A stretch of 64,000 bases of DNA from Anolis carolinensis (GCF_035594765.1 NC_085844.1:236918107-236982106); one strand, 5' to 3'; shown: positions 16,132 to 44,900, counted from the first letter of the stretch. Notes: a model not told the origin generated them from the sequence alone. Program-made: numbers and translations.

Positions 16132-16202
<71 letters not shown>

Positions 16203-19200: not shown

Positions 19201-22200
19201 CTCCCGCCTGGGCACACAGAATGCTGGGCAACATGCAAGGCGCTGAACAGACTGCGCTCTGGCACCACCAGATGCAGAGCTAACCTTAGGAAATGGGGCT
19301 ACAAAGTGGAGTCCACAACATGTGAGTGTGGAGAAGAGCAAACCACAGACCACTTACTACTCTGCAGTCTGAGCCCTGCCACATGCACAATGGACCTGCC
19401 ACATACACCTTCTAACAATGACACCAGAGGCACTCGAAGTGGCCGGCTTCTGGTCAAAGGAAATTTAGTACAATGCCAAGCTTTTAACTTTGTTTGTGTT
19501 TTTTGTACGCATTATAACTGTATTCTCAATTTGTTTCTGACACGATAAATAAATAAAACCTAGTCACTGTCTATAAAGGCTTCATTTCCTTACCTGATTG
19601 GTCCATTTGCATAGATTTCTCTCATCATATCTTCTCGCCCACTGATATATTCATAATCTCCCACTTTCCAACGGGTGTAGTTCTTTACCACATAACATTT
19701 GTTGAAGATAACACAGGTCCCACATTTAGTAAACTTCTTGCACTCTGCAAAAAGGTTGGTAAGAGAAAGCTTTGACTGACGTGAAAAGTTGCCTTTCATC
19801 TAGTAACAAAAAAGAGTGAAATAAAATTCTGCAATGCCTTCCTGTCATCTGGATTTAATCCTTTTTTATTTCTTTATTTATTCATAGAGATACCTAAGCA
19901 CCCTCCTATTCAATTCATACAGGAATCGGGCCACAGGTACTAGAGAGAAAAGGAAGAGGCAGAATCTTGCCCTTCCCTGTATTCTACCAGCAAACTACTT
20001 TTCCATTTTGAATTCAATTTGCAGCAAATGAAGTAAACCAAGAAGAAAGTGAAATGGCAGACAAAGGTTTGAGATAATGAGACAAAGAGAGTTCCGGTTG
20101 CTGTAGAAAAAGACGTTTATTCTCAGTGGCCAGAGAGAATAAGCAATAGGAAGGACCTTCTCCTGTAATCAGGAAAGCAAAGGTACAGAACAAAGAAACA
20201 CAGGTTCTTATATACCTTTTTTGCCTCCATCTACCTACGTCATATAGGCATTATCCATCACCAATTAGTGTCAAAAAAGTCTTATTTTGCACTTTACTAA
20301 AAGCTACTTTTGCATTTTCCTAAAATATAGACTACTTTCAAGACCTCTGACCCTCCATTAGGCCTTATCTAAGGAATTCCTATCTAAGCTTTCTGAGGTT
20401 CCCATTAATTGAAGAATTCCCCCTTATCCTAGCTTTTAGGGAGTCATTAGCACTCCTACATGGCGCCAGGTCTTATCTTGACATCCCAAAAGCCTTAATT
20501 TGTCTTTTGTCCATTATCTTATCTATTCTTGTTGACACTTGACATATGTCTCTGGCACTTAAGGTGAACTTTGGTCTCTGCTTATAGGGAGACGGTTATT
20601 TGCTAGGCAGCGTGTATTTTGGGGCTATATGCACACAATCTGCTTGTGATTACATATTTTCCTATTCCTATTTCTAATATGATTGCATTCAATATGTAGT
20701 TTCCAATGCAAGTATTATATTCTCCCAATACACCTTCATCAAAAGGAGGGAAATAAAAGGCGAAAAGGAAAAACTCAAAGATTTGAAAAGCATCTGAAAA
20801 AGCAGCCATAATCGGGGCTACAGAGTCAGACCCTTGACCTCTTCCAGGTGGAAATGCCAGGCACCTTTCCTGTGTTTGCCAGACACATAATGTTTGCAAA
20901 TTCCAACATGCATTCTCTGTATTATGCTGTACTTCTCTGTTTTAATTATTTGTGATTTAAACAATTCTGACTAGCAAACAGAATTTATAATAGAGTAGAA
21001 AAATAAAACAGAAATCCATGTCTTACTTTGATCCTTAGCTACATAATTGCTGCATGTCTCATCCGGGATGCCATGGCGATGGGCATATCTCCACACGAGC
21101 ATCTCGTTTCCACCCTTGCAAGACCCACCACGAGAACAATCCACAACATGCTGAACTGAGAGAAAAGCAGAAGGCCAGGCCCCTTTTCTCTTGATGTTGA
21201 TGCGGTCTGAGAAATGGAGGCAAACAACAGTTGATTAAAGGCATGAACAGAAATTTCCAATATTCTGCAGTTTGTGTAATATCTTACAGTTCTAATAGAA
21301 TGAGTGGAACATGCACCTCTTTCAAACCATACCCTTGCCTAGAACACTCTATTCTACACTATCCAATTTTCTCATTTTCAATGGTTTGAGGATATTATTT
21401 GTTTTCAACTGACAATTTGATAGCCCATCTATCCCCAGTTTTCCTCTAAGGTTTGTTTGTTTCCCTCTGAAACTTCTTCAAGCTTCCTTGTAGGGCACTG
21501 GAAGTCACATAAGGCTACACAGAGCTCTGCACTCAGATAATTGATTTCAATTACATAAGATGGAAATGTTGGGATTTGCCCTGTTTAAGGGACTCCCCCC
21601 GCCCCCCAGTGATGCAAGGTCTTTGCTAGGAGCAACATTCACTTTGCTAATTCCTCTAACAATCAGGAATACCATTCCCACAAATATCAGTGAATGAGGC
21701 AAAGTGTCGGCAGGATGAAAGTCTCACCTGGAACCACTCTGAGTGTGACCTCTGTGCACCTTTGTGTGTATGTCATCTCAGCAGTGAAAAGAAAAATACA
21801 TTTGCATCCCTGTCAAGTGGCTGTGGAACCACATGGAATGGTAAGGCTATGGTTTCAAGGTGGGGGGTAAATAGAAGGGAATTGTTGGAATGTGTCTCCG
21901 TCAACAACATAAAACTGAGGAATGAATCAAGCTGATGTCCAGAAGCAGATGAGCCCCCTTCCTCTTTTCCAACTACCACTGTCTTTGTCTTGGAGGGAGA
22001 GAAGAAGAGGCAGTATCTGCTGGACTTCATGCTGTCCCGCACAGCCGTCTGCTTTTTCTCTGTGTCATGTCTTAATTAGACTGTAAGGCTGAGGCGGGAT
22101 GCCCAGAGCAACATTTACTCCATAAATTTCCCCCTGCAGTATATTCCTGTTACAAAGATGCACACCTTTAGAGGGTTTGCAATTTATTTGTTCTAGACCT

Positions 22201-23487
22201 TCGTCTGTTCATTTTTCTTCAAACCTGCATCCTGATGCTCCTAAAATAGCTTTTTGAAATGGTTAATGGTTCTCTGGAGACATCTGGGACATCATTGTGG
22301 TTGGGAGAATGGGTCACATTAAGGAATACATGCGCCTTACAGATACACTTGGTCTACTGCTGCTCCATGGGAGCTGGGAACAAGGGAGCTGATAATCACA
22401 ATAGGAAAATGACAGGCACATACCGGCCAGGGCGCTGGTGGCAGCATGAGCCCAGCAAGACCCACAGAACTGTGGGACACCCTGGTTGCGAGTAGGACTT
22501 GCGTAATTGACGCCGTTCACATTTCGCCAGTCCCACTTCTTGGGGATTTCTGACATGTTCAGGTATTCATGTGGACGAGAGTAAGTTCTGTGATGCGAGA
22601 AACAGGATGGAGAACGTAAGACTTTTTCTATAGTCAGGCAAGGATCATAGCATTTCCTCCTCCATCTTAAGAAGTGGAATAAATTAGAATCATATTCAAA
22701 TTAGAATCATAGAGCGAGAAGTGATTCCAAGAGCCATCCAGCCCACCACTGTTCTGTTATGCAGGAATACACAACCAAGCCACGTCTGACAGATGGCCAT
22801 CCAGCCTCCGTTTAAAAGCTCCCAAATAAGGAAATTCGACTTCACTCTGAGTTAACTGTTATTGTCAACTTAACAGCAGGTAACAACAACTAAGCCACTG
22901 GTGGAGCCCTCAGTGGTGTAGTGGATTAAAGCCTTGTAACTTGAAGGTTGGGTTGCTGACCTGAAGCTGCCAGGTTCGAATCCCATCCGGGGAGAGCGCA
23001 GATGAGCTCCCTCTATAAGCTCCAGCTCCATGTGGGGACATGAGAGAAGCCTCCCACAAGGATGGTAAAAACATCAAAACATCCGGGCATCCCCTGGGCA
23101 ACGTCCTTGCAGACAGCCAGTTCTCTCATACCAGAAGCGACTGACACGAATAAAAAAGTCACTGGCTAGGCAAACTGTACCTAGCAAAATGCTCTCTTCT
23201 CCCCAAATATCAAAGATAAAAGAGGCTTTTCTTTCCTCATCAGTGCACTCTGTGTGGCAGAGCAGGTTGCCAGATGTAAGATCTAGGCTGGACTATAGGG
23301 ATAAGGAGGAGCAGGGTTACCTGGGATTGTCACCTTACCTGACTCCTTGAATCCTGTGTGGCATTGGTTTGTAGCAACTTTCCCCTTCCTTGAAATGGAC
23401 AGTAGCAGCTGATACAGGAGAATGGCAGACATAGGCACACAGCAGTAGCGCCAGGATAAAGAAGGGCAAGTGGGCATTTACGGGCAT
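14027..23487 (-). CDS. Cathepsin Z-like paralogue A (306 aa, intact); exons 23487-23339, 22587-22424, 21206-21027, 19744-19594, 16756-16594, 14140-14027
   Basis: GCCATG start; signal peptide [20 protein letters not shown]...; pro-peptide SCYKP; [14 protein letters not shown]; ANHVV; RNSWGEPW; ends YGDPIIP*. Exon sizes 149/164/180/151/163/114 total 921 nt. All introns GT-AG, no stops or frameshifts. Confidence 0.93.
14538..15460. mobile_element. Probable solo LTR (Gypsy-like) in intron 5 of A, with a nested Sauria SINE fragment (~15215-15423); homologue at ~39357-40536 in C
   Basis: TGTCATG...CATGACA inverted termini and ggact-rich body. The nested SINE has TSD ctagggtcattg. No clean TSD for the LTR itself. 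Confidence 0.5.
16131..16203. repeat. (GTT)n(ATT)n microsatellite
   Basis: Directly visible. Confidence 0.95.
16979..17275 (+). mobile_element. Sauria SINE
   Basis: ggagcccct..gttaaaccgctgagctgctgaacttg..catgcaaatgtgagtagatcaatagg consensus. Confidence 0.8.
17939..19559 (+). mobile_element. 5'-truncated Vingi/Ingi-type LINE in intron 4 of paralogue A
   Basis: Decayed RT-like coding sequence, C-terminal [11 protein letters not shown] motif, 3' end ctgacacgataaataaata, and 8-bp TSD ctagtcac (17931-17938, 19560-19567). Family name assigned from recall. Confidence 0.75.
20050..20741 (-). mobile_element. Solo LTR (692 bp) in intron 3 of paralogue A
   Basis: TG...CA termini and 4-bp TSD aaag. 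Minus-strand TATATAA (20214-20208) then AATAAA (20121-20116); CCAAT at 20261. Absent from the homologous site in C (about 43620-43635). Confidence 0.75.
22903..23155 (+). mobile_element. AnolisSINE2-type SINE in intron 1 of A (absent in B and C)
   Basis: A and B boxes, 3' ctgacacg end, and flanking cactgg duplication. Confidence 0.8.
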
Positions 23488-23879
23488 GGCTCCCACCTCT
23501 TGTGACAGTCCTAGCAAAAGTAGGATGCACACGGCTCCAACAGACCTACAGGAAAAAAGATATCTCCATAGATTGCAGCCTTAAAATATTACAATAAGAA
23601 ATTGTTGAGCCAGGAAATATGCTTCTACCTTCTGTTGTTGTTTTCTTTGCCCTGGCTACTATGAAATGCAGCTGGCCAGAGGGTTCCTTCCTTTATTATG
23701 TTGCCCAGCTTGTCAGAGAAGTCAAAGATGGAATTGAATTCTTGCATCATCTGAGCAGCCGTTTTATATGGTTTCCGTCCTCCCTATCTCAGCTTTAGTA
23801 TCTGAACTGATTGCCATCTGCACTGATATGTTCAACTGCTAAAATACTCTTGTAGTCTTTCAACAGTAAACTATGAACT

Positions 23880-24700
23880 GCCCACCTTACAGCTTAATGG
23901 GGTAATGGTAGAAAAAGTTGACCATTTTCACTACCTTGACAGCCACCTCTCCACAAAAGCTAATGTTGACACAGTAATACAACACTGCCTGAGTGCACGA
24001 TTTTTCTAAATGAAGCAGAGAGTGTTCGAGGATCGGGACATTCATAGGGACACCAAGTTACTTGTTTATAAAGCTTTTGGCCTCCTGTTATACGCCTGCG
24101 AAACGTGGACCATCTACAGACGTCACACTGAACTCCTGGAATGATTCCATCCGCGTTGCCTCTGAAAAATCCTGCAAATCTCTTGGGAAGACAGGTGGAT
24201 GAATGCCAGTGTGCTGGAAGAAGCAAAGACCACCAGCATTGAAGTGATGCTCCTACGCTATGAACTTTGCTGGACTGGCCACATTGTCTGAATGCTCAAT
24301 CACAGTCTCCCAAAACAGTTACTATACTCCCAACTCAAGAACGGAAAATTGAACGTTGGTGGACAGGAAGAGATTTAAAGGTGGGCTTAAAGCTCACCTT
24401 AAAAACTGTGGCATAGGCACCGAGAACTGGGAAGCCCTGGCCCTTGAGCTGGAGGTCGACTGTGACCAGTAATGCTGTGGAATTTGAAGAGACATGAATG
24501 GAGGGCAAAAGGGAGAAACATGCCAAGAGGAAGGTGCGTCAAGCCAACCCTGACCTGGACCGCATTACACCTGGAAACCAATGTCCTCACTGTGGAAGAA
24601 AATGTGGGTCAAGAATTACTACATATCCACCGAAAGGACACTGCACCTGGAAGACAATAATACCCGGACAATGAGGGATCACTTAAAAAGTAAAAATGGA
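23880..24700 (+). mobile_element. RTE-clade (BovB-like) LINE 3' fragment upstream of paralogue A
   Basis: Decayed RTE RT C-terminal coding sequence (FxYLxS, CETW, RWxGH-like motifs). Absent at the homologous site in B and C (aactgcccac|aagaatg). Confidence 0.7.
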
Positions 24701-27446: not shown

Positions 27447-27487
27447 CCTGACGTTTCGCCCACATCTATGGCAGGCATCCTCAGAGG
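27447..27487 (-). ncRNA. Minimal type I hammerhead ribozyme motif (Penelope-associated), same strand as paralogue B
   Basis: Reverse complement of 28442-28482. Confidence 0.75.
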
Positions 27488-28441: not shown

Positions 28442-28482
28442 CCTCTGAGGATGCCTGCCATAGATGTGGGCGAAACGTCAGG
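28442..28482 (+). ncRNA. Minimal type I hammerhead ribozyme motif (Penelope-associated)
   Basis: cct-CTGAGGA-t-gcctgc-loop-gtgggc-GAAA-cg-TC-agg. Core boxes present, stem I cct/agg, stem II gcctgc/gtgggc, palindromic ACGT stem III. Confidence 0.75.
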
Positions 28483-28592
28483 AGAGAATGCTTCTGGAAC
28501 ATGGCCACACAGCCCGAAAGACATACAACAACCCAACATTCTGTTGGATTTCTTTCAGAAGACATGCATGCAAAGACAGCTCAAATGCAGGA

Positions 28593-31085
28593 TCAAGGTA
28601 TGATGGGGTCTCCATAACTGCAGTGTTCTTCCACACCCAAGTTGAAGTTATTGCCTTTTCCATTTTTATATGCACTCGTCACAATTCTAAACCAGCCGCG
28701 TTCCCCCTGCAAGATATTAATTGGTAAAGAAGTATTGGATGCAGCTCAAGTAGAAGCAATTTATTATTATACTTTTTAAAAATGCTTGTGTACCAAGAGG
28801 TAATGTTGTCCTGTCCTGGGTTATTCCTGAAGGATGCAGGTGGTCGGGGTCGGATAGTTGGGTGTTTGTGGGTAAACACAGAACAACATAATACGGTGGC
28901 TAATCAGTGAGAGCCACAAAGATAGTGAACCAGTATCCCAACATTCCCGGGTAGCTGGTAGAATATTTCACTGCTAGAATAGCAACTCACTTAATGCCTT
29001 CTGTTGGGCTATTTATTTTGAAGGCTCAACACAAATAGAAAATAGAAAATAAGTTCAGCGAATAATTTGAGTATAAAACTTATACTGTTCAAATTCACAG
29101 TAATCCCAAACAATATTGTGTGGATTTTGTACAATCACTATGAAGTAGTACCAACATCGTGTGATCTTATGCCAAGTTGAACATGAATCATCCATCCACG
29201 ACTGGTTTCGTTCTTTCTCCAGGCCTTCTTCTGGTGGTAAAGTTATAAACTTGACATTTGTTCTCCTTAGAGATACAGGTTTTTATACGTAGTGGGATGG
29301 GATACTCTGCTGTGTGTTTGATTGATGGGCGGCTGATTCATGTTCAACTCGGCATAAGAACACACAACGTTGATACTATTTCAGAGTGAATGTACAAAAT
29401 CCTAATGAAGTAAACTCCCCATAGTTTAGTTCTCTGCACCAAAAATGCACAATCTACAGTCTAAAGTCAGTATGACTCTCCTCATGTTCTAGGATCCTTT
29501 CTCACTATCCTACAGTGTTATGTTTCACTTTAATTGCCTTGGTGACATCCTAAATCTATAGGTGTCCATACATTTACATGCATGACAGATGTCATCCCCA
29601 GCCCACACTGCTCAAGACTGAAAAGGGTCTGCCTCCCTCTTGCATCCCCTTTGATGGAATAGTGTCCAACATCTTCACACCAACCGTGGACTCTACTAAA
29701 TCTGTGGACTCAACTAAATCCCTAGAGAGACATACACTCATCTCATTTGTGATTCTATTGCATATCTTACCCAGGGCTCGCCCCAAGAGTTGCGAACAAT
29801 CCAGTACTCGATTCCGTTTTCTACTCCCCAGCCAGAAACACTGACAAGGTGGTTTGCTATTGTTGTCTCATTGTATTCAGTAAAAATGCCTCCTGTGTAT
29901 TCATCCAGCTTTGGAGTCTGCATAATTGTACAGCTGTTTAAAAACAACAACAAAATATCATTTTAAAGATGCTTCTGAGATTAAATTTATTTATTTATTT
30001 ATTTATTTACAGTATTTATATTCCACCCTTCTCACCCCGAATGGGACTCAGGGCGGATCACATTATACACACATAGGGCAAACATTCAATGCCCATATAC
30101 ACATAGAACCGAGACAAAGACAGACGCAGAGGCAATTTAACCTTCTCCTCAGGGGATGTTCCATTCTGGCCACAGGGGGGAGCAGCTGCTTCCTCATCCA
30201 CTGTGACGGCACTTCCTCATTCCAACGTCGTAAATTAGTTAAATTTGCCTCCCCACTTTATAAGTGGTACCTTATTTCCTACTTGATAAATGCAAGTATC
30301 TTTCGGATTGCTAGGTCAGCAACGAGCAGGGGCTATTTTTTATTTTTAATTGACTGGTGCTCACCCCGCCACGGGCTGGCCTTGAACTCATGACCTCATG
30401 GTCAGAGTGATTTATTGCAGCAGGCTGCTCACCAGCCTGCACCACAGCCACAGCAGTGTCTAGAGTGTACAGATTAAATGTACACTCTAGACACTGCTGC
30501 CAAAATAAAGGATTATATACTGATGATCTCAGAACACTGAAACTTGCAATAAGAAAAATAATCTAGCAGGCTCATAACCACACTCCAAGGCCATGTAACA
30601 AAGCTCCTCCATTAACCTGAAGGTAGTGCCACAAAATAGCATGTCTACTACCACCACTGGTTTCTCACCCTCATAAAAGAAAGCAATGATGTAGGTTCAG
30701 CCTGTTTCAACTTCTTTCTGTAGTTGGATTCACCACTCCATAGAAGTAATGAAATGAAAGAAATAAACTGTTCTATTAGCCAATCTTCTTCTGCTCTTCT
30801 GCCTGAAACAAATTCAGACCCATTCAATCTACAGAGCAAAGAACCTGAAACAGTAGTGTCACTACAGCATGTAAACAATACAAACCCTCATTGGGGATTT
30901 CACCAAAATGACTTGCCTATAAAATATCTGTGCTAAAAAAAATTACTATTTTTTTAAAATATCCCTGTAGTTAAATATAACCATGAAAATATTTTTATAA
31001 CCCAGCTTACCTACTCTATGCTAATTTCCTTTTTGATATCTTCTAATAATTTGTAGGTATTTCATTCAGAACTTTCATTATTACC

Positions 31086-31136
<51 letters not shown>

Positions 31137-34100
31137 AATAATGGTGTGATTCAAATAGTTTCACTTGTACATGCTGATTTTTCATGATTGTTGATTTTGT
31201 CAAATTATGATATATTAGTTACAGTATTGTGGAGTAGTCTGGTCTGGTATGTTACTGGTGCTGAGTGCGTCTTACAATCAGTGATATCTCAGAATGGAAG
31301 AAATATGGTATTTTCTAGTCGCAAGATCTGCATCCTGTCAGATCCCTAAAATCTGAAGGAAAGCAGGAGTCATAACCATTTTGAAACCAGACAAAAACTG
31401 TAACAATCCACAAACCTATAGACCAATCTTGTTGTGCCATCTTTATAAATTTCTGAAGAGACTTATGCTGCACAGAATTATGGAAAAAAATAGGCCCATT
31501 TATTATCCCATAGCAAGCTAGATTGAGGAAAGGGAAAATCTGCACATAACAAATGCTGAAGCTGATTCAGCACATGGAAGATGGTTTCGAAAGGTCAGAG
31601 AAGCAGATGGCGAAAACAGAAGATCGGCCTATCTCAGGGAAGCGTGTTTGCTCCATCAATTTTTAACATTTACACAAGTGATCAGCCACTGCCAGAAGGG
31701 ACAGAGAGTTTCATCTATGCTGACAACCATGCCATCACCGCTCATCAATGGCTGATACCCGATGAGAAACTCACCCCTTGGCACACGCAATACTGGGCGA
31801 CGTAGAAAGCACTGCACAAACTGCTCTCTGGCACCACGAAGAAATGGGGCTACAAAGTGGAGTCCACAACATGTGAGTGTGGAGAAGAGCAAACCACAGA
31901 CCACCTATTACAATGCAGTCTGAGCCCTGCCACATGCACAATGGAGGATCTTCTAACAATGACACCAGAGGCACTCTGAGTGGCCAGCTTCTGGTCAAAG
32001 GAAATTTAGAACAATGCCAAGCTTTTAAGTTTGTGTTTTTTGTATGCATTATAACTTTATTCTCAATTCCTTTCTGACACAATAAATAAATAAAACCTAG
32101 TCACTGTCTATAAAGGCTTCATTTCCTTACCTGACTGGTCCATTTGCATAGATTTCTCTCATCATATCTTCTCGCCCGCTGATAAATCCAAAATCTCCCA
32201 CTTTCCAGAGGGTGTAGTTCTTTACCACATAACATTTGTCGAAAATAACACATGTCCCACACTTTGTAAACTTCTTGCACTCTGCAAAAGTGTTGGTAAG
32301 AGAAAGCTTTGACTGGCGTGGAAAGTTGCCTTTCATTCAATAACCAAAAAGAGTGAAATGAAATTCTGCAATGGTTTCCTTTCATCTGGATGACCCTTTT
32401 TACTTATTTATTTGGGGTTGTTGTATGTCTTTCGGGCTGTGTGGCCATGTTCCAGGAGTATTCTCTCCTGACGTTTCATCCACATCTATGGCAGGCATCC
32501 TCAGAGGTTGTGAGGATGCCTGCCATAGATGTGGGTGAAACGTCAGGAGAGAATACTTCTGGAACATGGCCACACAGCCCGAAAGACATACAACAAGCCT
32601 GTGATCCCGGCCATGAAAGCCTTCGACAACATACTTATTTATTTATTCATAGAGCTACCTAAGCAGCCTACTATTCAACTCATAGGAATCGGGCCATGAG
32701 CATTAGAGAGCAAAGGAAGAGGCAGAATCTTGCATTAGAAAAACCAGCCTTTCAAAGGGTTAATCGGGGCTACAGAGTCAGGCCCTGGACCTCTTCCAGG
32801 TGGAAATGCCAGGCACCTTTCCTGTGTTTGCCAGGCCCAGAATGTTTGCAAATTTCAACATGCATTCTCTGTATTATGCTGTACTGTTCTGTTTTAATTA
32901 TTTGTGATTTAAACAATTCTGTCAAGCAAACAGAATTTATGATAGAGTAGAAAAATAAAACAGAAATTCTGGTCTTACTTTGATCCTTAGCTACATAATT
33001 GCTGCATGTCTCATCCGGGATGCCATGGCGATAGGCATATAACCACAAAAATATATCATTTCCACCCTTGCAAGACCCAGCACCAGAACAATCCACAACA
33101 TGCTGAACTGAGAGAAAAGCAGAGGGCCAGGCCCCTTTTCTCTTGATGTTGATGCGGTCTGAGAAGTGGAGGCAAAGAACAGTTGGTTAAAGGCACAAAT
33201 AGAAACTTCCAGTATTCTGCAGTATATATAATATTTTACAGTTCTAATAGAATGAGTGGAATTTGCATCTCTATCAAGCCATGTCCTTGCCTTGAACACT
33301 CTATTCTACACACACTATCCAATTTTCTCATTTTCAATTGTTTGAGGATATTATTTGTTTTACATTGACAATCTGATAGCTTGCCTATCCCCAGTTTTCC
33401 TCTAAGGTTTGTTTGTCTCACTCTGAAACTTCTTCAAGCTTGCTGAGAAATGATTTCAGTGACATAAGATGGTAATGTTGGGATTTGCCCTGTTAAGGGA
33501 TGCTCCCCAGTCATGCAAATTTTTGCTAGGAGCAACATTCACTTTGCTAATTCCTCTAACAATCAGGAATACAATTCCCACAAATAACAGTGAATGAGGC
33601 AAAGTGTCGGCAGGATGAAAGTCTCACCTGGACCTCTCTGAGTGTGACCTCTGTGCGCCTTTGTGTGTATCTGATCTCAGCAGTGAGAAGAAAAATATGT
33701 TTGCACCCAAGTTTCAATTGATGCTAATATGTATTGCCCATCATATTCCCTTTCAAGTGGCTGGGGAACCACATGGAATGGTAAGGCTATGGTTTCAAGG
33801 TGGGCGTAAATAGAAGGGAATTGTTGGTTTGTGTCTCCATCAACAGCATAAAACCGAGGAATTAATCAAGCTGATGTCCAGAAGCAGATGAAGCCCCTTC
33901 CTTTATTCCAATATCCACTACATTTGTCTTGGAGGAACGAGGCAGTATCCACTGGACTTCATGCCATCCTACATAGCCGTCCAATTTTTCTCTGTGTCAT
34001 GTCTTAATTAGATTGTAAGGCTGAGGCGGGATGCCTAGAGCAACATTTACTCCATAAATTTCCCCCTGTAGTATATTCCTGTTACAGAGATGCACAACTT

Positions 34101-34984
34101 CAAAGTGTTTGGAAGTTATTTGTTCTAGACCCTCATCTGTTCATTTTTTTTTCAAACTTGCATCCTGATGCTCCTAAAATAGCCTTTTGAAATGGTTAAT
34201 GGTTCTCTGGAGACATCTAAGACATCATTGTGGTTGTTTTGATGAAGACATTTTGGTATGGGAGAATGGGTCACATTAAGGGATACATGCGTCTTTCAAA
34301 TGCACTTGATCGACTGCTGCTCCATTGGAACTGGGGATAAGGACAGGGTGATAAACACAAGACAAGAACAGCCACATACCGGCCAGGGCGCTGGTGGTGC
34401 CGTGAGCCCAGCAAGATCCACAGAACTGTGGGACGCCCTGGTTGCGAGTAGGACTTGCGTAATTGACACCGTTCACATTTCGCCAGTCCCACCTCTTGGG
34501 GATTTCTGACATCTTCAGGTATTCATGTGGACGAGGGTAAGTTCTTTGATGCAAGAAACAGGATGGAGACTGTTATAAAAGCTCCCAAATAAGGAGATTC
34601 AACTTCACTCCGAGTTAACTGTTACTGTCAACTTAACAGCAGCTAATGACAACAAAGCCACTGGTGGGCAAATTGTACCTAGGAAATGCTCTCTTCTACC
34701 CAAATATCAAAGAAAAAAAAGGCTTTTCTTTCCTCATGAGTGCACTCTGTGGGGCAGAGCAGGTTGCCAGATGTAAGATCTAGGCTGGGCTATAGGGACA
34801 TGGGGGAGTAGGGTTACCTGGGATTGTCACCTTACCTGACTCCTTGAATCCTGTGTGGCATTGGCTTGTAGCAACTTTCCCCTTCCTTGAAGTGGACAGT
34901 GGCAGCTGATGCAGGAGAATGGCAGACATAGGCACACAGCAGAAGTGCCAGGATGAAGAAAGGCAGGTGGGCATTTACGGACAT
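28593..34984 (-). CDS. Cathepsin Z-like paralogue B (306 aa, intact); exons 34984-34836, 34543-34380, 33158-32979, 32281-32131, 29933-29771, 28706-28593
   Basis: Same exon sizes and phases as [11 protein letters not shown]...SCYKP; [17 protein letters not shown]; [11 protein letters not shown]; ANHLV; RNSW; [12 protein letters not shown]. The exon 2 acceptor is AAG instead of CAG. Confidence 0.92.
29987..30450 (-). mobile_element. tRNA-headed, L2-tailed SINE in intron 4 of B (second copy ~48649-49092 -)
   Basis: Two near-identical dispersed copies; L2-type stem-loop tail with (taaa)n; TSD agattaaat. Confidence 0.7.
31087..31134. repeat. (ATT)n microsatellite
   Basis: Directly visible. Confidence 0.95.
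31323..32096 (+). mobile_element. Internally deleted copy of the same Vingi-type insertion in paralogue B
   Basis: Same ends and TSD (ctagtcgc/ctagtcac). The empty site is at 43142-43149 in copy C. Confidence 0.75.
32414..32632. mobile_element. Short palindromic Penelope-like remnant in intron 3 of paralogue B; minus-strand hammerhead motif at 32467-32507
   Basis: Two inverted copies of the same terminal sequence as in 27359-28533. Confidence 0.8.
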
Positions 34985-36969: not shown

Positions 36970-37860
36970 CAGTTTGGGGGTCCTTCTGGACTCAGCGCTG
37001 ACGCTTGAAGCTCAGGTGTCAGCAGTGGCCGGAAGGGCTTTTGCACAGTTAAAACTTGTGCACCAGCTGCGACTGTACCTCGAAAAGCATGACTTAGCCA
37101 CGGTGGTCCATGCCTTAGTTACATCTAAGATGGATTACTGCAATGCACTCTACCTGGGGCTGCCTTTGGAGACGGCTCGGAAACTGCAATTAGTGCAAAG
37201 GTCGGCAGGCAGATCGCTAACCAGGGCTGCTTATAGGGAGCATACTATGCCTCTATTGAAGCAGCTCCACTGGCTGCCGACAAGTTTCCGGGCCCAATTC
37301 AAAGTGCAGGTTATTATCTACAAAGCCCTATACGGTTCGAGTCCAATCTATCTTTGCGACCGTATCTCTTTTTACAAACCGTCGCAGACTCTGAGGTCCA
37401 CTGGGGAGGCCCTTCTCTCAGTCCCACTGCCTTTACAAGTACGTTTGGTGGGATCAAGGGAGAGGGCCTTCTTGGTGGTGGCCTGGCTCTGGAATGTCCT
37501 CCCAATGGAAATTACACTGACCCTCACCTTCCAATGTTTTTGGTCCAACCTAAAAACTTGGCTCTTTAACCAAGCTTTCAAATAGATATAGAGCCCCAAA
37601 GGTTAAAATTCTAGACCTATTGGTTTTCTCACTGAAAGCACTTTATATGACTGGTTGATTGTTATTCATTTTATGTCTATAATTACCATAACATTTTATT
37701 GATGTGTATTTTAGGGTTAATTGATTTTACTGTGGTTTTGTTAAGTATTGATGATGTGAATTATGTTTCCCTTTGATATTTATGTATCTGTATTTATTGC
37801 ACCGTATGTATTGTTACATTATGAGTGATTTGTAAGCCATCCTGAGTCCCTTTTGGGAGA
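36970..37860 (+). mobile_element. L2 LINE 3' fragment
   Basis: ORF LGVLLDSALT..VHALVTSKMDYCNAL..LHWLP..RAFLVVA.LWN.LP and L2 tail gccatcctgagtcccttttgggaga. Confidence 0.85.
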
Positions 37861-37990
37861 NNNNNNNNNNNNNNNNNNNNNNNNNNNNNNNNNNNNNNNN
37901 NNNNNNNNNNNNNNNNNNNNNNNNNNNNNNNNNNNNNNNNNNNNNNNNNNNNNNNNNNNNNNNNNNNNNNNNNNNNNNNNNNNNNNNNNN
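37861..37990. other. Assembly gap (130 N)
   Basis: Run of n. Confidence 1.
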
Positions 37991-37999
37991 TATGACACA

Positions 38000-38356
38000 G
38001 CAAACAAGATAGACATGCTGGATTTCATTACACAAAATCACAAGTCGAACACTTCCCAAGTGTCTAGGACTGTGTGATGTACTTTTGGATGATGTGTGCA
38101 AATCCCAGTAGGGTGGCCTTTTGCAGTTGACAAATTGTAATTTTGTCAATGTCTATTGTTTCCAAATGCCGGCTGAGATCTTTTGGCACGGCACCCAATG
38201 TGCCCATCACCACCGGAACCACCTGCACTGGTTTCTGCCAGAGTCTTTGAAGTTCAATCTTGAGGTCCTGATAGCGGCTGAGTTTTTCCTGTTGTTTTTT
38301 ATCAATTCGACTGTAACCTTGATGAAAAACAACAGGAAAAAACTCAGCCGCTAGCA
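38000..38356 (-). mobile_element. R4-clade (Dong/Rex6-like) LINE 3' fragment next to an (ATT)n(CAT)n microsatellite at 38360-38447
   Basis: EKLSRYQDLKIELQRLWQKPVQVVPVVMGTLGAVPK...LQKATLLG is a restriction-like endonuclease C-terminus. Confidence 0.8.
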
Positions 38357-38358
38357 GG

Positions 38359-38446
<88 letters not shown>

Positions 38447-38985: not shown

Positions 38986-41900
38986 TCAAGGTATGATGGG
39001 GTCTCCATAACTGCAGTCTTCTTCCACACCCAAGTTGAAGTTATTGCCTTTTCCATTTTTATATGCACTCGTCACAATTCTAAACCAGCCGCGTTCCCCC
39101 TGCAAGATATTAATTAGTAAAGAAGTATTGGAAGGAGCCCAAGCTGAAGCAATTTTTTATGATCCTACTTTACAAATGCTTGTGCACCAAGAGTTAATTG
39201 GGTTATTCCTCTGGTTGCGGTGGGATATTTAGGTGTTCATGGTTGGATACAGAACAACATAGTATGACAGTTGATCAGTGAGAGCCACAAGGGTAGGCTA
39301 AGCATCCTTCCTAAAAGATTTAGACTAGGGATAACCAGTTTTCTGGTGGTGATTTATGTCACGGCCAGAAGTTAGTCTGGCTTGGCTGCTGCTGGGTGCT
39401 TGGAAAGAGTTAATCTGATTCAGCTTCTTGGGTCAAGATTACTTTTCCTTTTAAGGAATGCATCAGAGGCTTCTGTGATGATCTGTACAGGCTTGAATAA
39501 ATGAATAGCAACAAGAATCTCAGGATAAATAATGGGTCTGGAAGAGACAGCTGTTTGGTAACAGGTGACATAGTACCTTCGTAATTGTATCATAGACTTT
39601 GGCTGTTGTAGGAGCTGTGGTGGCGCGATGGGCTAAACCTTTTTCTGCTGAACGGCTGACCTGAAGGGTGAACTCCGTTTGTCAGATACAGTCCCTGTCA
39701 ACCTAGCAGTTTGAAAACATGTAATGTGAGTAGATAAATAGGCACCACTTCAGTGGGAAAAGGGCAAGGAGATGTTCAAAGCAATATTTCCAGCAACACA
39801 ATCAGGAGATGACAACACAGGCTCCTCAGCTTGAAAAATGGAGGAGAGCACCTCTGCAGAACCAGAGATGACGCACTGCCTCCAGAAGCCGGAAATGAAA
39901 AGGAGAAGCCCCTGCCTTTGTTGTGTTTGTGTGTCTCATTTGTATATGATTGTAATGGCATTGGATGTATGTAAATGCTGTAATCCATTCTGAGTCCCCT
40001 AGGGGAGAAGGGCAGAATATAAATAAAGTATGTTGTTGTTGTTGTTACCCTGGTTTAGAATGTTGGATCCTAACCTTGTTCCTTCAACTCCCTTTTGGAC
40101 TCCACCGCTTTTAAAAACTTGTCTTGTTGTTCCCTGAACCCTGGCATCTTGGTTGACCTTCTTGGATTTGACATATGGACTTGGACTTTTCTTTTACCCT
40201 TGACTATTTGACTCAACTTTGGAACTCTGAGTACGGTTTGCATTCTTGAACTCTGGAACACTATCCGAAGTGAACTCTCGCAACCTGACTTTTGGACTGC
40301 AGACTTAGCTACTGTTTGTTCTTGCTCCTGAACCGCCTCTATAGTATTTTCAGCCTTTGATCATGATTTGTGTAACCCTGGCTGTGTGCTGTATTTCGGT
40401 TTTGTCTGGTCAGATCCTTGAAAGACTTAAGGCTTTTGTTCTCAGTTTAAAGAAGTCTGGCCTTGGATCATTCTGTGTGTGTGTGTTTCTTTAATATATA
40501 AAACTCTGCCAGGGTTAGAGCTGCCCAGAACATGAGTTTCCCTTGAAATCTGATGGTAAGCATGGTATGTTTTGGTAAGTCTCAATTTATGATCAAGCTG
40601 CTTACATCCATGAATATAGTACATATCAAAGGTCTCTAAGGATCTTATTCCAAAGAAACAAAACCCCAGGAAACACTTGCACTGATGAAGTTTGCATTCT
40701 TCAGAAATCTGGAATGCAAAAGTGCATAAAAACATGGGCCACTTCTTGAAATTATAGATAAGTTTCCATTGGTGTTTAGCTACCACAGAACTGGTCCTGA
40801 GATCCTTCACATGAAGTGATCAATGAAGGTGTGACCAATGTCCTTTCTCACAGGTTGTAGCCCACAAGTATCTAAGCAAAATCTCACCCAGTGATGCAGT
40901 GAGGACTTGCCAATGAATGTCCTTATTTTGATTTCAACCTCTTTATAGTTGCTGTGACATGTGGTAGTGGAAAGGGGAATCACATATGGCCTCGTGGCCT
41001 CAAATCATATCAAGCTAGACTTGTCAGCTAATACTTCACATTCTGCATACTAACATAAAGATTACCATTTGTACAAAATCTTTCAGACATTGGAATGATT
41101 CAGCACAGTGTGATATCTAATCTTATGAATATTAAATGTAGCTATATGGATTATCAGAAGCACAAATGATAATTAAGTAAACCCCCCATAGTTTATTTCT
41201 CTGCACCACAAATGCACAATCTACAGCCTGGGGTCAGTAACTCTCCTCATGTTCTATGGTCCTTTCACACTATCCTATAGTTTTATGTTCTATTTTAATA
41301 GCCCTGGTAACAACCTAAGTCTATATGTGTCCATACATTTACTTGACAGCTGTAATTTTGGACCCAGCCATCCCCAGCCTACACTGCTCAGGACTAAAAA
41401 GGGTCTACCTGCCTCTTGCATCCCCTTTGATAGTATAATGTTCATCATCTTCACACCCACCATGGACTTTATTCATCCAACTCAAGCCTTTAAAGAGCCA
41501 CACACTCATCTCAATTTTGCTTCCTCTGCCTGTCTTACCCAGGGCTCGCCCCAAGAGTTGCGGACAATCCAATATTCGATTCCGTTTTCTACTCCCCAGC
41601 CAGAAACACTGACAACGTGGTTTGCCATTGCTGTCTCATTGTATTCAGTAAAAATGCCTCCTGTGTATTCATCCAGCTTTGGAGTCTGCATAATTGTACA
41701 GCTGTTTAAAAACAACAACAAAACACCAGTTTAAAGATGCCACTGAGATTAAATGTATACTCTACACCAGTGGTTCCCAACCTTTTTTTTGACCAGGGAC
41801 CACTTTGACCAGGGACCACTCTCCAACATTAGTATCAAAAGGATTACAAATCAGTTTTTGGTCAACTTTAGATTCAGCTTGGTTATCTGGGATGCCGATT

Positions 41901-44900
41901 CAGAAAATTGCACTGAATAGACCACATCAACTCTAGTGTCTATCCAGTTGCTGCCATCTGCTCGCCCACTAAAAACCATATTTAATAATCTAGAGCTGAT
42001 GTGGTCAATTCAATGCAATTTCTGAATCAGCACCCAAAGAATCCCAGGAACAGGCCTAAAAATGAAGACACCAAGGTGTCTTTGCTTCCAGGTGCCTCAT
42101 GGAATGGCTCCACTCAGGGGGAGGGTGGAGGAGGAGAAGCAGCAGTCAGGAGGCTTATTGTCACACCTTTCGTGGGTTGTCTACCTCTCCCCTCCCGACA
42201 TCCTCCTCATGGCCTTGGCACTATAAGAGGGTGGTGCACGACCAGCTGCTCTCGTTGCAACGGTGTAGCAATGGTGAGGCCACGGAACATATTTTAGTTC
42301 TTGGAGACCTCTGGTGGTTCATGGACCACAGGTTGGAAACCACTGCTCTAGACACTGCTGTTGAAATAAAGGGTCATATCCTGATGATCTCAGAACACTG
42401 AAACCCATGATAAGAAAAAAAATCTAACAGGCTCACAACCACACTCCAAGGCCGTGTAACAAAGCTCTTCCATTAACCTGAAGGTAGTGCCACAAAATAT
42501 CATGTCAACTACCACCACTGATTCCTCATCCTCATAAAATAAATCAGTGAGGTAGTTCAGCTTGTTTTAACTCCTTTTGTAGTTGGATTCACCACTCACT
42601 AGAAGAAATGAAATGGAAGGAATGAACTGTTCTATTAGCCAATCAACTTCTGCTCAAAGTCTGAAAGAAATAACATGAGCAAATAACAGAGCAAATAACA
42701 TGAAACAGTGGTATCATCACAGCATGTGGACAATACAATCTCCTCAGTAGAGGTTACACCAAAATGACTTGCCTATAAATATCAGTGAAGCAGAAATTTA
42801 CTATCATTTTTTAAAATACCTCTGCATTTAGATATAACCATGAAAATATTTTCATAACCCATTTTACCCTTTCATAACCCATCATAACCCTATGCTAATT
42901 TCTTTTTTGATACCTTCTAATAATTTGTAGTCACTCCATTCAGAACTGTCATTATTACCTAATGACAATGGTGGTGCAAGACAAATAGTTTCATCTGTAC
43001 ATGCTGGTTTTTCATAATTGTTGATTTTGTCAAATTATGATATATTAGTTGCAATATTGTGGAGTGGTATGTCTCCGGTACTGAAATTAGAGGTTGTCTT
43101 ATAATCAATGGTGTTGCAGAATTGAAGAAATATGGTATTATCTAGTCACTGTCTATAAAGACTTCATTTCTTTACCTGATTGGTCCATTTGCATAGATTT
43201 CTCTCATCATATCTTCTCGCCCTCTGATAGATCCATAATCTCCCACTTTCCAGAGGGTATAGTTCTTTACTACATAACATTTGTCGAAAATAACACATGT
43301 CCCACACTGTGTAAACTCCTTGCACTCTGCAAAAATGTTAGTAAGAGAAAGCTTTGACTGACATGGACAGTTGCCTTTCATCCAGTAACAAAAAGAGTGC
43401 AATTAAATTCTCCAATGCCTTCCTGTCATCTGGATTTGATCATTTTTTACTTATATATTTATGTATAGAGCTACTTTAGCAGGCTCCTCTTCAACTCATA
43501 TAGCAAATGGGTCACAAGAATTAGAGAACAATGGAAGAGGCAGAATCCTGCCCTTCTCTGTTTTCTACCAGTAATTTTCTTTTCCATTTTGAACTCCATT
43601 CGCAGCAAATGAAGTTAACCAAGAATAAAGGAGGGAAATGAGAGATGGAAAGGAAAAACTAGAAGATTTCTAAAGTATCTGAAAAGGCAGCCAGTCAAAG
43701 GATAAATCGAGGCAACAGAGTCAGGCCCTGGACCTCTTCCAGAAGGAAATGCCAGTCACCTTTCCTGTGTTTGCCAGGCGCAGAATGTTTGCAAATTCCA
43801 ATGTGCATTCTCTGAATACTGTACTTTTCTGTTTTATTTGTGAGTTAAACAATTCTGACTAGCAAACAGAATTTACGATAGAGTAGAAAAATAAAAGAAA
43901 TCCAGGACTTACCTTGATCCTCAGCTACATAATTGCTGCATGTCTCATCCGGGATGCCATGGTTATGGGCATAAAACCACACGTAATAATCATATCCACC
44001 CTTGCAAGACCCAGCACCAGAACAATCCACAACATGCTGAACAGAGAGAAAAGCAGAGGGCCAGGCCCCTTTTCTCTTGATGTTGATGCGGTCTGAGAAG
44101 TGGAGGCAAACAACAGTTGGTTAAAGGCACAAATAGAAACTTCCAATATTCTGCAGATTGTATAATATCTTACAGTTCTAATACAACGAGTGGAATTTGC
44201 ATCTCTATCAAGCCATGCCCTTGCCTAGAACACACTATACAAAATTCTCATTTTGGTTTGAGAATATTATTTGTTTTCCACTGACAATGTGATAGCCTGC
44301 CTATCCCCAGTTTTCCTCTAAGGTTTGTTTGTCTTCCTCTGAAACTTCTTCAAGTTTGCTGATATCTCCTTGTAGGGTACTCGAAGTCATAGAAGGCTAC
44401 ACAGAGATCTGCACTCAGAGAAATTATTTCAGTGACACAAGATAGTAATGTTGGGATTTGCCCTGTTAAGGGATACCCTCAGTGATGCTAGGAGCAACAT
44501 TCACTTTGCTAATTCCGCTGACAATCAGGAATACCATTCCCACAAATATCAGCGAATGAGGCAAAGTGTTGGCATGATAAAAGTCTCACCTGGAACCAAT
44601 CTGAGTGTGACCTCTGGGCACCTTTGTGTGCATCTGATCTCGTCACCGAAAGCCAGGACACGAAACAGATCAAGGTTTGCCCTGAATGCACATGACTACT
44701 TTGAGTCTCCTTCAGGCTGAGAAAGGTGGGGTATAAATCAAGTAAATAAATAACAGGCACATACCGGCCAGGGCGCTGGTGGTGCCGTGAGCCCAGCAAG
44801 ATCCACAGAACTGTGGGACGCCCTGGTTGCGAGTAGGACTTGCGTAATTGACGCCATTCACGTTTCGCCAGTCCCACCTCTTGGGGATTTCTGACATCTT

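What the first reader, a model, noticed from the sequence alone, without database searches (positions are those of the whole stretch)
21027..44092. Hypervariability concentrated at the substrate-binding S2/S3 positions of the paralogues
Seen: directly after CxGG in exon 3 the copies read [11 protein letters not shown] (A), [11 protein letters not shown] (B), [11 protein letters not shown] (C) and [11 protein letters not shown] (canonical). Between B and C I count 11 nucleotide differences in these 11 codons, all within codons that change amino acid, against about 3 in the rest of the exon. Other variable sites are GPIS-C-[G to S/T/T], the residues around the catalytic His (FINHI to MANHV/IANHL/MANHV) and the C-terminal E-x-[Q to D/H/D]-C. 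By motif alignment these match papain positions 67-68, 133, 157/160 and 205, which line S2/S3. Inference: diversifying selection on specificity, as seen in immune, digestive or glandular protease families.
Basis: partly seen in the sequence, partly recalled or inferred. Interest (0 to 1): 0.8.

Follow-up and report, generated by a model that had tools for sequence, protein, structure and literature searches.

The report
Fast-evolving substrate cleft, anole cathepsin-Z copies
Three intact tandem copies of a lizard-specific offshoot of the protease cathepsin Z in the green anole differ from one another mainly at residues lining the substrate-binding groove, and codon tests indicate that selection has repeatedly changed a handful of those residues.

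Summary
The window (Anolis carolinensis) holds canonical CTSZ on the + strand and three intact 306-aa paralogues, A, B and C, on the - strand. My models equal RefSeq proteins, and copy C is seen spliced in two independent studies. The N gap is intergenic.

The patch is mature cathepsin X residues 75-85. The scattered variable sites are the published S2 pocket residues 154, 181 and 234; 178 carries a fixed Ile-to-Ala change. S2 enrichment is P=0.002.

Patch omega is about 6 among A, B and C, while synonymous sites around it are unchanged. With coding sequences from five more lizards (10 sequences in all), M1a versus M2a gives P=4e-9. Selected sites are 77, 81, 85 (one helix face), 177 and 234.

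Diversifying selection is therefore supported, with caveats. Gene conversion and multi-nucleotide changes can inflate the test. These positions also vary among orthologues. No structure mapping was possible for 77/81/85, and specificity is untested.

The scan had already noted this array (s1-603478).

The parts
2486..9014 (+). Canonical cathepsin Z (Z), exons 2-6: 2486-2649, 5053-5232, 6123-6273, 6598-6760, 8901-9014 (stop included). Exon 1 was not found in the window. Mini-loop reads HIPQY, residue 72 is Glu, patch reads [11 protein letters not shown] at 5151-5183.
   Evidence: GT-AG at every intron. 94.5% identical to Anolis sagrei CTSZ P0237.
14027..23487 (-). Paralogue A, 306 aa. Exons 23339-23487, 22424-22587, 21027-21206, 19594-19744, 16594-16756, 14027-14140.
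   Evidence: Identical to RefSeq XP_003227369.1 (P0382).
28593..34984 (-). Paralogue B, 306 aa. Exons 34836-34984, 34380-34543, 32979-33158, 32131-32281, 29771-29933, 28593-28706.
   Evidence: Wholly contained in RefSeq XP_062835053.1 (P0377), which adds a predicted 69-aa N-terminal extension.
38986..45544 (-). Paralogue C, 306 aa. Exons 45396-45544, 44765-44928, 43913-44092, 43176-43326, 41539-41701, 38986-39099.
   Evidence: Contained in RefSeq XP_062835054.1 (P0379, 3 extra N-terminal residues). Spliced contigs with joints 44928>45396, 44092>44765, 43326>43913 and 41701>43176 and no mismatches in runs X7 and X14.
21076..21108 (-). Patch of copy A, mature residues 75-85, [11 protein letters not shown].
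33028..33060 (-). Patch of copy [12 protein letters not shown].
43962..43994 (-). Patch of copy [12 protein letters not shown]. Sites 77 (43986-43988), 81 (43974-43976) and 85 (43962-43964) fall in the omega>1 class.
41614..41628 (-). Copy C residues 177-181 (MANHV): selected site 177, S2 residues 178 and 181, catalytic His180. Equivalent codons are A 16669-16683 and B 29846-29860. S2 residue 154 is at C 41695-41697, B 29927-29929, A 16750-16752.
39016..39018 (-). Copy C residue 234 (Asp), the S2 floor and equivalent of human His234 (papain 205). B 28623-28625 is His, A 14057-14059 is Asp, Z 8982-8984 is Gln. Posterior for omega>1 is 0.999.
   Evidence: PMC9712828.
44808..44822 (-). Copy C mini-loop, residues 23-27, GVPQF (HIPQY in Z at 2592-2606). 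Loop length is kept; His23 and Tyr27 are replaced. Equivalent codons are A 22467-22481 and B 34423-34437. Glu72-to-Lys is at C 44001-44003, B 33067-33069, A 21115-21117.
37861..37990 (.). Assembly gap (N). Intergenic, between the stop of C and the ATG of B, inside a B-specific insertion of about 1.5 kb (36967-38441).

Best explanation
The green anole carries three intact tandem genes next to canonical CTSZ; at least copy C is transcribed. They descend from an old squamate duplicate of cathepsin X/Z. All keep the signal peptide, the pro-region Cys, the catalytic Cys31/His180/Asn200 and the three-residue mini-loop, so they are most likely active secreted or lysosomal cysteine peptidases. The whole clade (Anolis, Phrynosoma, Sceloporus, Varanus, Elgaria) has lost the His23 carboxylate anchor. 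Within the window, A, B and C also carry fixed Tyr27-to-Phe, Glu72-to-Lys (S1 charge reversal) and Ile178-to-Ala (S2) changes. On this background, the copies within a species and the orthologues between species differ mostly on the non-primed side of the cleft. The differing positions are the S2 pocket (76, 154, 181, 234, plus neighbour 177), the loop at 67-68, and one face of the helix that starts at the S2/S3 wall (75, 77, 78, 81, 84, 85). A few of these sites (77, 81, 85, 177, 234) have been replaced repeatedly under positive selection, while the rest of the gene is under purifying selection and is partly homogenised by gene conversion. The likely result is a small set of peptidases with different P2/P3 preferences. 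Shown: gene integrity, transcription of C, clustering of changes, mapping to the published S2 list, omega>1. Inferred: enzymatic activity, and that the selected property is substrate specificity.
For: Gene models and integrity. They equal RefSeq proteins. Spliced, mismatch-free contigs for C come from two studies. Family and numbering: ungapped alignments to 1EF7 and 1DEU; Pfam PF00112. S2, S1 and S2' residue lists: PMC9712828. Residue states. S2 enrichment among paralogue-variable sites: 4/6 against 29/243, P=0.002; outside the patch 3/5 against 21/232, P=0.006. Patch among A, B and C: dN 0.32-0.63 against dS 0.10-0.15 and intron divergence 0.09-0.18. Fixed-sites ML: omega 6.1 against 0.28; LRT against 1 gives P=5e-6, or 1.6e-3 after Bonferroni correction for 296 windows. 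Flanking synonymous sites are unchanged. Site models on 10 coding sequences: P=4e-9, with sites 77, 81, 85, 177 and 234. My M0 likelihood equals IQ-TREE's. Subsets. A-priori S2 partition: omega 1.75-2.4. Shift to bulky hydrophobic or aromatic residues at 75/77/78/81: 2, 3 and 4 in A, B and C, against 0-2 in 47 orthologue fragments. Patch and S2 also differ between orthologous copies of A. carolinensis and A. sagrei.
Against: The exon-3 sites that vary between paralogues are also the most variable among canonical orthologues (entropy 1.65 against 0.32, P=3e-5), so low constraint contributes. Over the full 10-sequence tree the patch as a whole has omega 1.37, not significantly above 1 (P=0.09), and the 13 published cleft residues together have omega 1.05. 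The anoles-only M2a test is borderline (P=0.05), as is one of the one-per-species subsets (P=0.075). Copies group by species, which means gene conversion, and that can inflate site-model tests. Many patch codons differ by 2-3 nucleotides, and single-step codon models then overestimate omega. I could not measure distances of 77, 81 and 85 from the cleft; the AlphaFold model was unusable (pLDDT 38). Expression of A and B, the tissue, the activity and the specificity are all untested.
Confidence: 0.6

Rival explanations
1. Relaxed constraint plus artefact. After duplication the copies are partly redundant. The patch and the rim of S2 are intrinsically tolerant surface positions that drift quickly. 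Gene conversion lowers the apparent dS elsewhere, and multi-nucleotide mutations make omega look greater than 1.
For: The same exon-3 positions vary most among canonical orthologues. Patch omega over the wide tree is 1.37, not significantly above 1. Copies show concerted evolution. Codons with 2-3 differences are concentrated in the patch. The anoles-only M2a test gives P=0.05.
Against: Neutral drift cannot exceed omega=1. Yet the patch among A, B and C has omega about 6 (P=5e-6), and five sites reach omega about 7.7, including in subsets without within-species paralogues. Synonymous sites inside and next to the patch are not elevated (1 of 55), and flanking introns show ordinary divergence. 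Replacements are directional, towards bulky hydrophobic residues outside the orthologue range. All three genes keep intact ORFs with background omega 0.2-0.3.
Confidence: 0.2
2. Positive selection is real, but the selected property is not substrate preference. It is instead binding of, or escape from, protein inhibitors such as cystatins (whose N-terminal trunk lies in S2-S3), or a protein-protein or dimer interface formed by the hydrophobic helix face.
For: Selected sites 77, 81 and 85 lie at i, i+4, i+8 on one helix face that becomes strongly hydrophobic or aromatic in B and C, as interfaces often are. In human cathepsin X, His23 and Tyr27 clash with the cystatin QVVAG loop (PMC9712828), and both are replaced here, so inhibitor relations must have changed. 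Cathepsin X is reported to act as a homodimer (PMC13257197).
Against: Sites 234, 154, 181 and 177/178 are pocket residues that define P2 preference in cathepsin X (PMC9712828), not a flat interface. No inhibitor or partner has been identified. The dimer interface was not mapped here.
Confidence: 0.15

Closest known systems
Human cathepsin X/Z (PDB 1EF7 mature, 1DEU proenzyme; MEROPS C01.013)
   Same: Exons 2, 3, 5 and 6 align without gaps. Same catalytic triad and same mini-loop length. The pro-region Cys is conserved. Same intron positions as the neighbouring canonical gene.
   Different: His23 to Gly, Ile24 to Val, Tyr27 to Phe, Glu72 to Lys, Ile178 to Ala. S2 residues 154, 181 and 234 and helix 75-85 are diversified. 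Strict carboxypeptidase action is therefore doubtful.
Canonical Anolis carolinensis CTSZ in the same window (2486-9014, + strand)
   Same: Same locus, same exon structure, 72-74% protein identity.
   Different: It keeps HIPQY, Glu72, Gly154 and Ile178 as in vertebrates from sharks to birds. dS to the paralogues is about 1.5, i.e. saturated.
RefSeq-predicted 'cathepsin Z' / 'cathepsin Z-like' proteins of the Gly23 type in A. sagrei (P0203, P0380, P0383), Phrynosoma (P0221), Sceloporus (P0384, P0313), Varanus (P0242) and Elgaria (P0385)
   Same: A monophyletic clade with the window copies (100% support). His23 is replaced in all. The patch and S2 vary in all.
   Different: Non-anole members carry an extra Ala after Cys71. 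Copy number is 1-2 rather than 3. Varanus and Elgaria keep Asn94, a polar residue 78 and Ile/Leu178.
Lineage-specific tandem protease expansions with positive selection at specificity sites, such as the rodent placenta-expressed cathepsin L-like genes (recalled from my own knowledge, not checked here)
   Same: Tandem duplicates of a lysosomal cysteine cathepsin, with fast amino-acid change concentrated at the cleft.
   Different: The parent here is the carboxypeptidase cathepsin X, not an endopeptidase. The tissue and role are unknown. The primed-side anchor has also changed.
Cathepsin B occluding loop (His110/His111)
   Same: An inserted element carrying His docks the substrate's C-terminal carboxylate. 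Mutating those His residues or deleting the loop changes the balance between exo- and endopeptidase activity (PMC9712828).
   Different: Here nature has replaced the single anchoring His but kept the loop. The consequence is untested.

Membership tests
Cathepsin X/Z (papain family C1A, MEROPS C01.013) | Peptidase_C1 fold with catalytic Cys31, His180 and Asn200 | tested here: met
   Pfam PF00112 on exons 2, 3 and 5. C, H and N are conserved in Z, A, B and C. Best PDB matches are 1EF7 and 1DEU.
Cathepsin X/Z (papain family C1A, MEROPS C01.013) | Three-residue mini-loop insertion (residues 24-26) ahead of the catalytic Cys | tested here: met
   Exon 2 aligns to 1DEU and 1EF7 without a gap; the loop reads V-P-Q instead of I-P-Q.
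Cathepsin X/Z (papain family C1A, MEROPS C01.013) | His23, which docks the substrate's C-terminal carboxylate (basis of carboxypeptidase action) | tested here: not met
   Gly in A, B, C and in all other clade members except Sceloporus 2, which has Asn. In the first profile search, 116 of the 120 listed family proteins have His.
Cathepsin X/Z (papain family C1A, MEROPS C01.013) | S1 formed by the Tyr27 ring and acidic Glu72 (Arg preferred at P1) | tested here: not met
   Phe27 and Lys72 in A, B and C. Residue 72 is itself variable among orthologues (E, H, G, Q).
Cathepsin X/Z (papain family C1A, MEROPS C01.013) | Short pro-region whose Cys is disulfide-linked to the catalytic Cys | tested here: inconclusive
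   The Cys in ...ESCYKP... (C41 of P0379) is at least 90% conserved across a 36-member family alignment. Exon 1 alone gives no significant match to 1DEU. The disulfide itself cannot be tested.
Cathepsin X/Z (papain family C1A, MEROPS C01.013) | CTSZ gene structure and locus | tested here: met
   Intron positions and phases are identical to canonical Z for introns 2-5. The array lies between canonical CTSZ and a tubulin gene. The same neighbourhood is seen in A. sagrei and Phrynosoma.
Cathepsin X/Z (papain family C1A, MEROPS C01.013) | Strict carboxy-monopeptidase activity | not testable with these tools
   Needs enzyme assays.
Tandem protease paralogues under diversifying selection at specificity sites | Sites with omega>1 in codon models | tested here: met
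   M1a versus M2a gives P=4e-9, omega2=7.7. Subsets. Likelihood code checked against IQ-TREE. Gene conversion and multi-nucleotide changes were not modelled.
Tandem protease paralogues under diversifying selection at specificity sites | Selected sites line the substrate-binding cleft | tested here: inconclusive
   Met for 234 (S2 floor) and 177 (next to S2 residue 178), using the published list. Residues 77, 81 and 85 lie on the helix after the S2/S3 wall, and no coordinates were available (model unusable).
Tandem protease paralogues under diversifying selection at specificity sites | Copies differ in substrate preference | not testable with these tools
   Needs recombinant enzymes and substrate libraries.

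The most novel reading that the evidence does not exclude
A clade of cathepsin X-derived peptidases, seen so far only in Iguania and Anguimorpha, has given up strict carboxypeptidase action: His23 to Gly leaves S2' open, and Glu72 to Lys (in the anole copies and some other members) reverses the S1 charge. In anoles it has become a three-gene set with distinct, positively selected P2/P3 pockets, engaged in an evolutionary conflict or a specialised secretion, whether reproductive, immune or digestive. This would be a second, independent example of the pattern seen in the rodent placental cathepsins, but starting from an exopeptidase.
Probability: 0.3. Interest if true: 0.7.

Novelty: new variant of a known kind. 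Interest (0 to 1): 0.55.

Why it matters
Cathepsin X is the one cysteine cathepsin regarded as a strict carboxypeptidase, and it is single-copy and conservative in most vertebrates. Here a natural clade keeps the mini-loop but drops the anchoring histidine, and then diversifies the S2 pocket under selection. That offers a ready-made series of variants for asking how the mini-loop, His23 and residues 154/178/181/234 set exopeptidase mode and P2 preference. It also points to an unrecognised fast-evolving protease system in iguanian and anguimorph lizards. In practice, RefSeq labels these genes simply 'cathepsin Z'. That can mislead expression studies that map reads to 'CTSZ' in squamates.

Tried and rejected
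1. Word search with exon 3 alone found only canonical-type fragments, because the tool's length limit hides full-length proteins.
2. The exhaustive representative search with exon 5 gave no representative closer than canonical CTSZ. Its only use was to supply a full-length reference (P0062).
3. The first profile alignment, A1, misplaced exon 1 and the start of exon 4. It was rebuilt as A2.
4. The idea that the patch is an older segment that escaped gene conversion is rejected: synonymous sites in and around it are unchanged (1 of 55).
5. The idea that the patch was copied from canonical Z is rejected: only 16-18 of 33 nucleotides match.
6. The AlphaFold2 model of copy C from a 36-sequence alignment had mean pLDDT 38. 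It was not used, and no fold search was run.
7. Exon 1 against the PDB gave no meaningful match.
8. The A. sagrei proteins P0380 and P0383 have no contig on record, so only one full and one partial A. sagrei coding sequence entered the codon tests.
9. The first anoles-only M2a run stopped at a local optimum (P=0.37). With several starting points it gave P=0.05.
10. P0103 and P0095 look human or primate-like and were not used after being displayed.
Exons were searched by reference. Joined coding sequences were built only inside scripts. Full-length work used database proteins identical to my models.
12. The tissue of expression could not be learned, because run labels are coded.


Full report
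WHAT IS THERE. The window holds four cathepsin Z/X genes. Canonical CTSZ (called Z here) is on the + strand at 2486-9014; its exon 1 was not found in the window. Three paralogues, A (14027-23487), B (28593-34984) and C (38986-45544), lie in tandem on the - strand. Introns 2-5 are at the same positions and phases in all four genes, and every intron is GT-AG. A, B and C each encode an uninterrupted 306-aa precursor with a signal peptide, a pro-region Cys and the catalytic Cys31/His180/Asn200. A beta-tubulin exon follows at 57365-58390, which is the usual CTSZ neighbourhood.

My models are confirmed independently. A is identical to RefSeq XP_003227369.1. B and C are wholly contained in XP_062835053.1 and XP_062835054.1 of Anolis carolinensis. 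The window is therefore green anole.

Contigs from two separate studies (runs X7 and X14) join exactly at my introns 1-4 of copy C with no mismatch, including across the patch. Copy C is thus transcribed and spliced as modelled. The run labels are coded, so the tissue is unknown, and expression of A and B was not examined.

THE GAP. The N run 37861-37990 lies about 1 kb beyond the stop of C and about 2.9 kb upstream of the ATG of B. It sits inside a stretch of about 1.5 kb (36967-38441) that B has and A lacks. It touches no exon or intron, so continuity or frame across it does not affect the finding. I did not fill it.

THE OBSERVATION. The B-C count is exact: 11 nucleotide differences in the 11 patch codons and 3 in the rest of exon 3.

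Among A, B and C, 33 of 306 positions vary. Under uniform placement P<5e-6. Under a deliberately generous null in which the whole gene is neutral, P=0.006.

Pairwise dN in the patch is 0.32-0.63. Gene-wide dS is 0.10-0.15 and omega outside the patch is 0.21-0.24. Introns differ by about 0.09-0.18. A fixed-sites codon likelihood gives omega 6.1 for the patch against 0.28 for the rest. The LRT against omega=1 gives P=5e-6, or 1.6e-3 after correcting for all 296 windows.

The patch is not an old segment that escaped homogenisation. In the patch plus 8 codons either side, only 1 of 55 synonymous comparisons differs, against 6.9% gene-wide.

WHERE THE SITES LIE. Exons 2, 3, 5 and 6 align without gaps to human cathepsin X (1EF7, 1DEU). 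This fixes the numbering: mature residue = precursor position minus 63. The patch is residues 75-85.

A review citing the crystal structure paper lists the following (PMC9712828). The S2 pocket is Gly74, Asp76, Gly154, Ile178, Val181 and His234, with His234 taking the place of papain Ser205. S1 is the Tyr27 ring plus Glu72. S1' is Trp202. S2' is walled by Ile24-Pro25-Gln26 and occupied by His23, which docks the substrate's C-terminal carboxylate.

Residue 154 is G in Z and S/T/T in A/B/C. Residue 181 is I in Z and V/L/V. Residue 234 is Q in Z and D/H/D. Residue 76 is D in Z and E/D/D. Residue 178 is fixed Ile-to-Ala in the paralogues. Four of six S2 residues vary among the paralogues, against 29 of 243 overall (P=0.002). 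Outside the patch the figures are 3 of 5 against 21 of 232 (P=0.006).

Residues 67-68 also vary. They lie in the loop that corresponds to the papain 59-61 S3 wall; that correspondence is my own alignment by motif. In other cathepsins the papain-70 position, which equals residue 78 here, is counted in S3 (CtsF Asn70, CtsV Arg72).

Only residues 75-76 of the patch equal papain 67-68. The remainder is the following helix. The variable positions there (77, 78, 81, 84, 85) fall on one face.

(a) These are not generic papain-like endopeptidases. They are cathepsin X derivatives whose other cleft walls have also changed, identically in A, B and C: His23 to Gly, Ile24 to Val, Tyr27 to Phe, Glu72 to Lys. 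The mini-loop is kept in length. This corrects the wording of the scan's sister note s1-603478, which says the loop was lost.
(b) Among 47 exon-3 fragments of canonical CTSZ from other vertebrates, the positions that vary most are the same ones: 67, 72, 75-78, 81, 84, 85. Val79, Tyr82 and Ala83 are fixed. Entropy at paralogue-variable sites is 1.65 against 0.32 elsewhere (P=3e-5). Part of the pattern is therefore low constraint. The paralogues do go outside the orthologue range, however. They have 2, 3 and 4 bulky hydrophobic or aromatic residues at 75/77/78/81, against 0-2 in orthologues. They also change Asn94 and Gln97, which are invariant in those fragments.

RELATIVES. The first profile search listed 120 family proteins. 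Only four of them lack His23, and all four are squamate: Anolis sagrei, Phrynosoma platyrhinos, Sceloporus undulatus and Varanus komodoensis. Cluster listings add A. carolinensis (three genes), A. sagrei ordinatus (three genes), a second Sceloporus gene and Elgaria.

The clade is monophyletic with 100% support, and its branching follows the species tree. The duplication therefore predates the split of Iguania and Anguimorpha. This fits the saturated dS of about 1.5 to canonical Z. No snake, gecko, lacertid or skink member appeared in the listed hits, but only the best 120 of each search are shown, so absence is not proven.

Both anoles have three copies in the same order next to the tubulin gene. 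Whole-gene trees group copies by species. Diagnostic residues nevertheless pair AcarA with the A. sagrei 306-aa copy and AcarB with the 309-aa copy. The triplication is thus older than the two species, with later gene conversion. Even between orthologous copies about 5 of 11 patch residues differ, against about 7% elsewhere.

I mapped six database proteins exactly onto their genomic loci. I then built a codon alignment of 10 Gly23-type genes. PAML and HyPhy are not installed, so I wrote M0, M1a and M2a myself. My M0 likelihood and tree length match IQ-TREE's GY+F3X4 to the third decimal.

M1a versus M2a gives 2dlnL=38.7, P=4e-9, with omega2=7.7 on 1.8% of sites. Posterior probabilities are 0.86 for site 77, 0.94 for 81, 1.00 for 85, 0.99 for 177 and 0.999 for 234.

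Subsets give the following P values:
- One sequence per species: 0.0075, 0.075 and 0.0014 with AcarA, AcarB or AcarC. Site 234 is always recovered.
- Iguania only: 8e-7.
- A, B and C only: 0.0015.
- Anoles only: 0.05.

With partitions fixed in advance on the full tree, the published S2 pocket has omega 1.75 (against background P=2e-10; against 1, P=0.03). Without the invariant Gly74 it is 2.4 (P=0.002). The patch as a whole is 1.37 (P=0.09), because four of its residues are conserved. All 13 published cleft residues together are 1.05.

READING. The best explanation is repeated adaptive replacement at a few positions of the non-primed cleft (the S2 floor and rim, and the helix face that continues from the S2/S3 wall), in an old, probably active cathepsin X offshoot that is triplicated in anoles. 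I put this at 0.6.

The main rival is relaxed constraint with omega inflated by gene conversion and multi-nucleotide changes (0.2). It is weakened by three things: the unchanged synonymous sites, the directional chemistry of the replacements, and the subsets without paralogues. It is not excluded.

A second rival accepts selection but places it on inhibitor or partner binding (0.15). Cystatins insert into S2-S3, His23 and Tyr27 normally hinder them, and the selected helix face is hydrophobic.

LIMITS. The AlphaFold model was too poor to use (pLDDT 38) and no coordinates were available, so the position of 77, 81 and 85 relative to bound substrate rests on homology with papain-family structures. 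I found no paper on these genes. The only squamate 'cathepsin Z' hit reports strong induction of 'CTSZ' in a pregnant skink uterus (PMC3318437). That is a lead only.

Two human or primate-like hits (P0103, P0095) were set aside.

VERDICT. The genes are already predicted in RefSeq under the name cathepsin Z. As a His23-less, S2-diversifying subfamily they appear undescribed, so I class this as a new variant of a known kind, of moderate interest.

Noticed in passing
window 57365-58390 (+): C-terminal exon of a beta-tubulin gene (Pfam Tubulin and Tubulin_C). The CTSZ paralogue array lies between canonical CTSZ and this gene, and the same neighbour is seen beside the A. sagrei copy (L001 1-5651).
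   Followed up: partly
window ~34985-35300 and ~23488-23800 (upstream of the B and A start codons); proteins P0377, P0378, P0203, P0381: RefSeq models of A and B, and of two A. sagrei copies, add a 60-70-aa N-terminal extension from a predicted upstream exon. It is conserved between the two anoles and contains a hydrophobic stretch ahead of the normal signal peptide. Whether it is translated is unknown.
   Followed up: no
L003 14968-15150, L002 13778-13960, L004 8769-8951, L005 11352-11534 (exon 3): Non-anole members of the Gly23 clade have a 183-nt exon 3 with an extra Ala directly after Cys71 (C-A-K/E/S-G-G), in the S1/S3 wall. Anolis and Sceloporus 2 have the 180-nt form, like canonical CTSZ.
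   Followed up: partly
window 41688-42263 (intron 4 of copy C): Summed contig depth runs from hundreds to tens of thousands across the four runs laid, with many rearranged joints. This looks like a high-copy, probably transcribed repeat inside the intron.
   Followed up: no
window 36967-38441: B-specific insertion that contains the N gap, a run of ATG/ATT-type simple repeat, and a 126-aa ORF with no Pfam match. Possibly a transposable-element remnant.
   Followed up: partly
mature residues 173-175 of A, B and C (e.g. C about 41632-41640): All three paralogues have an N-E-T glycosylation sequon just before S2-rim residues 176-178. Canonical Z lacks it there and has N-E-T at residue 191 instead. 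Copy A alone has an N-M-S sequon in the pro-region.
   Followed up: no
L002 (Sceloporus) 21372-32097; L004 (Varanus) 15190-18979: In Sceloporus the annotated 22-kb 'gene' spans a complete copy lacking its own exon 6, a stray canonical-like exon 4, and a second, more diverged copy without a recognisable mini-loop exon; this may be a decaying duplicate. In Varanus the canonical His23 gene follows the Gly23 gene on the same strand, whereas in Anolis and Phrynosoma the two are tail to tail, which implies an inversion.
   Followed up: no
protein P0228 (A. sagrei 'cathepsin Z-like'): Anoles have a further His23-type CTSZ-like gene (84% identical to Z) with an altered S2 (Ser154, Thr178, Lys234) and His72. 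Squamate His23-type entries in the searches fall into Glu72 and His72 forms.
   Followed up: no
window 27346-28593: Another note of the scan (s1-603511) reports a long hairpin and a hammerhead-like motif in the 3' UTR of paralogue B. I did not examine it.
   Followed up: no
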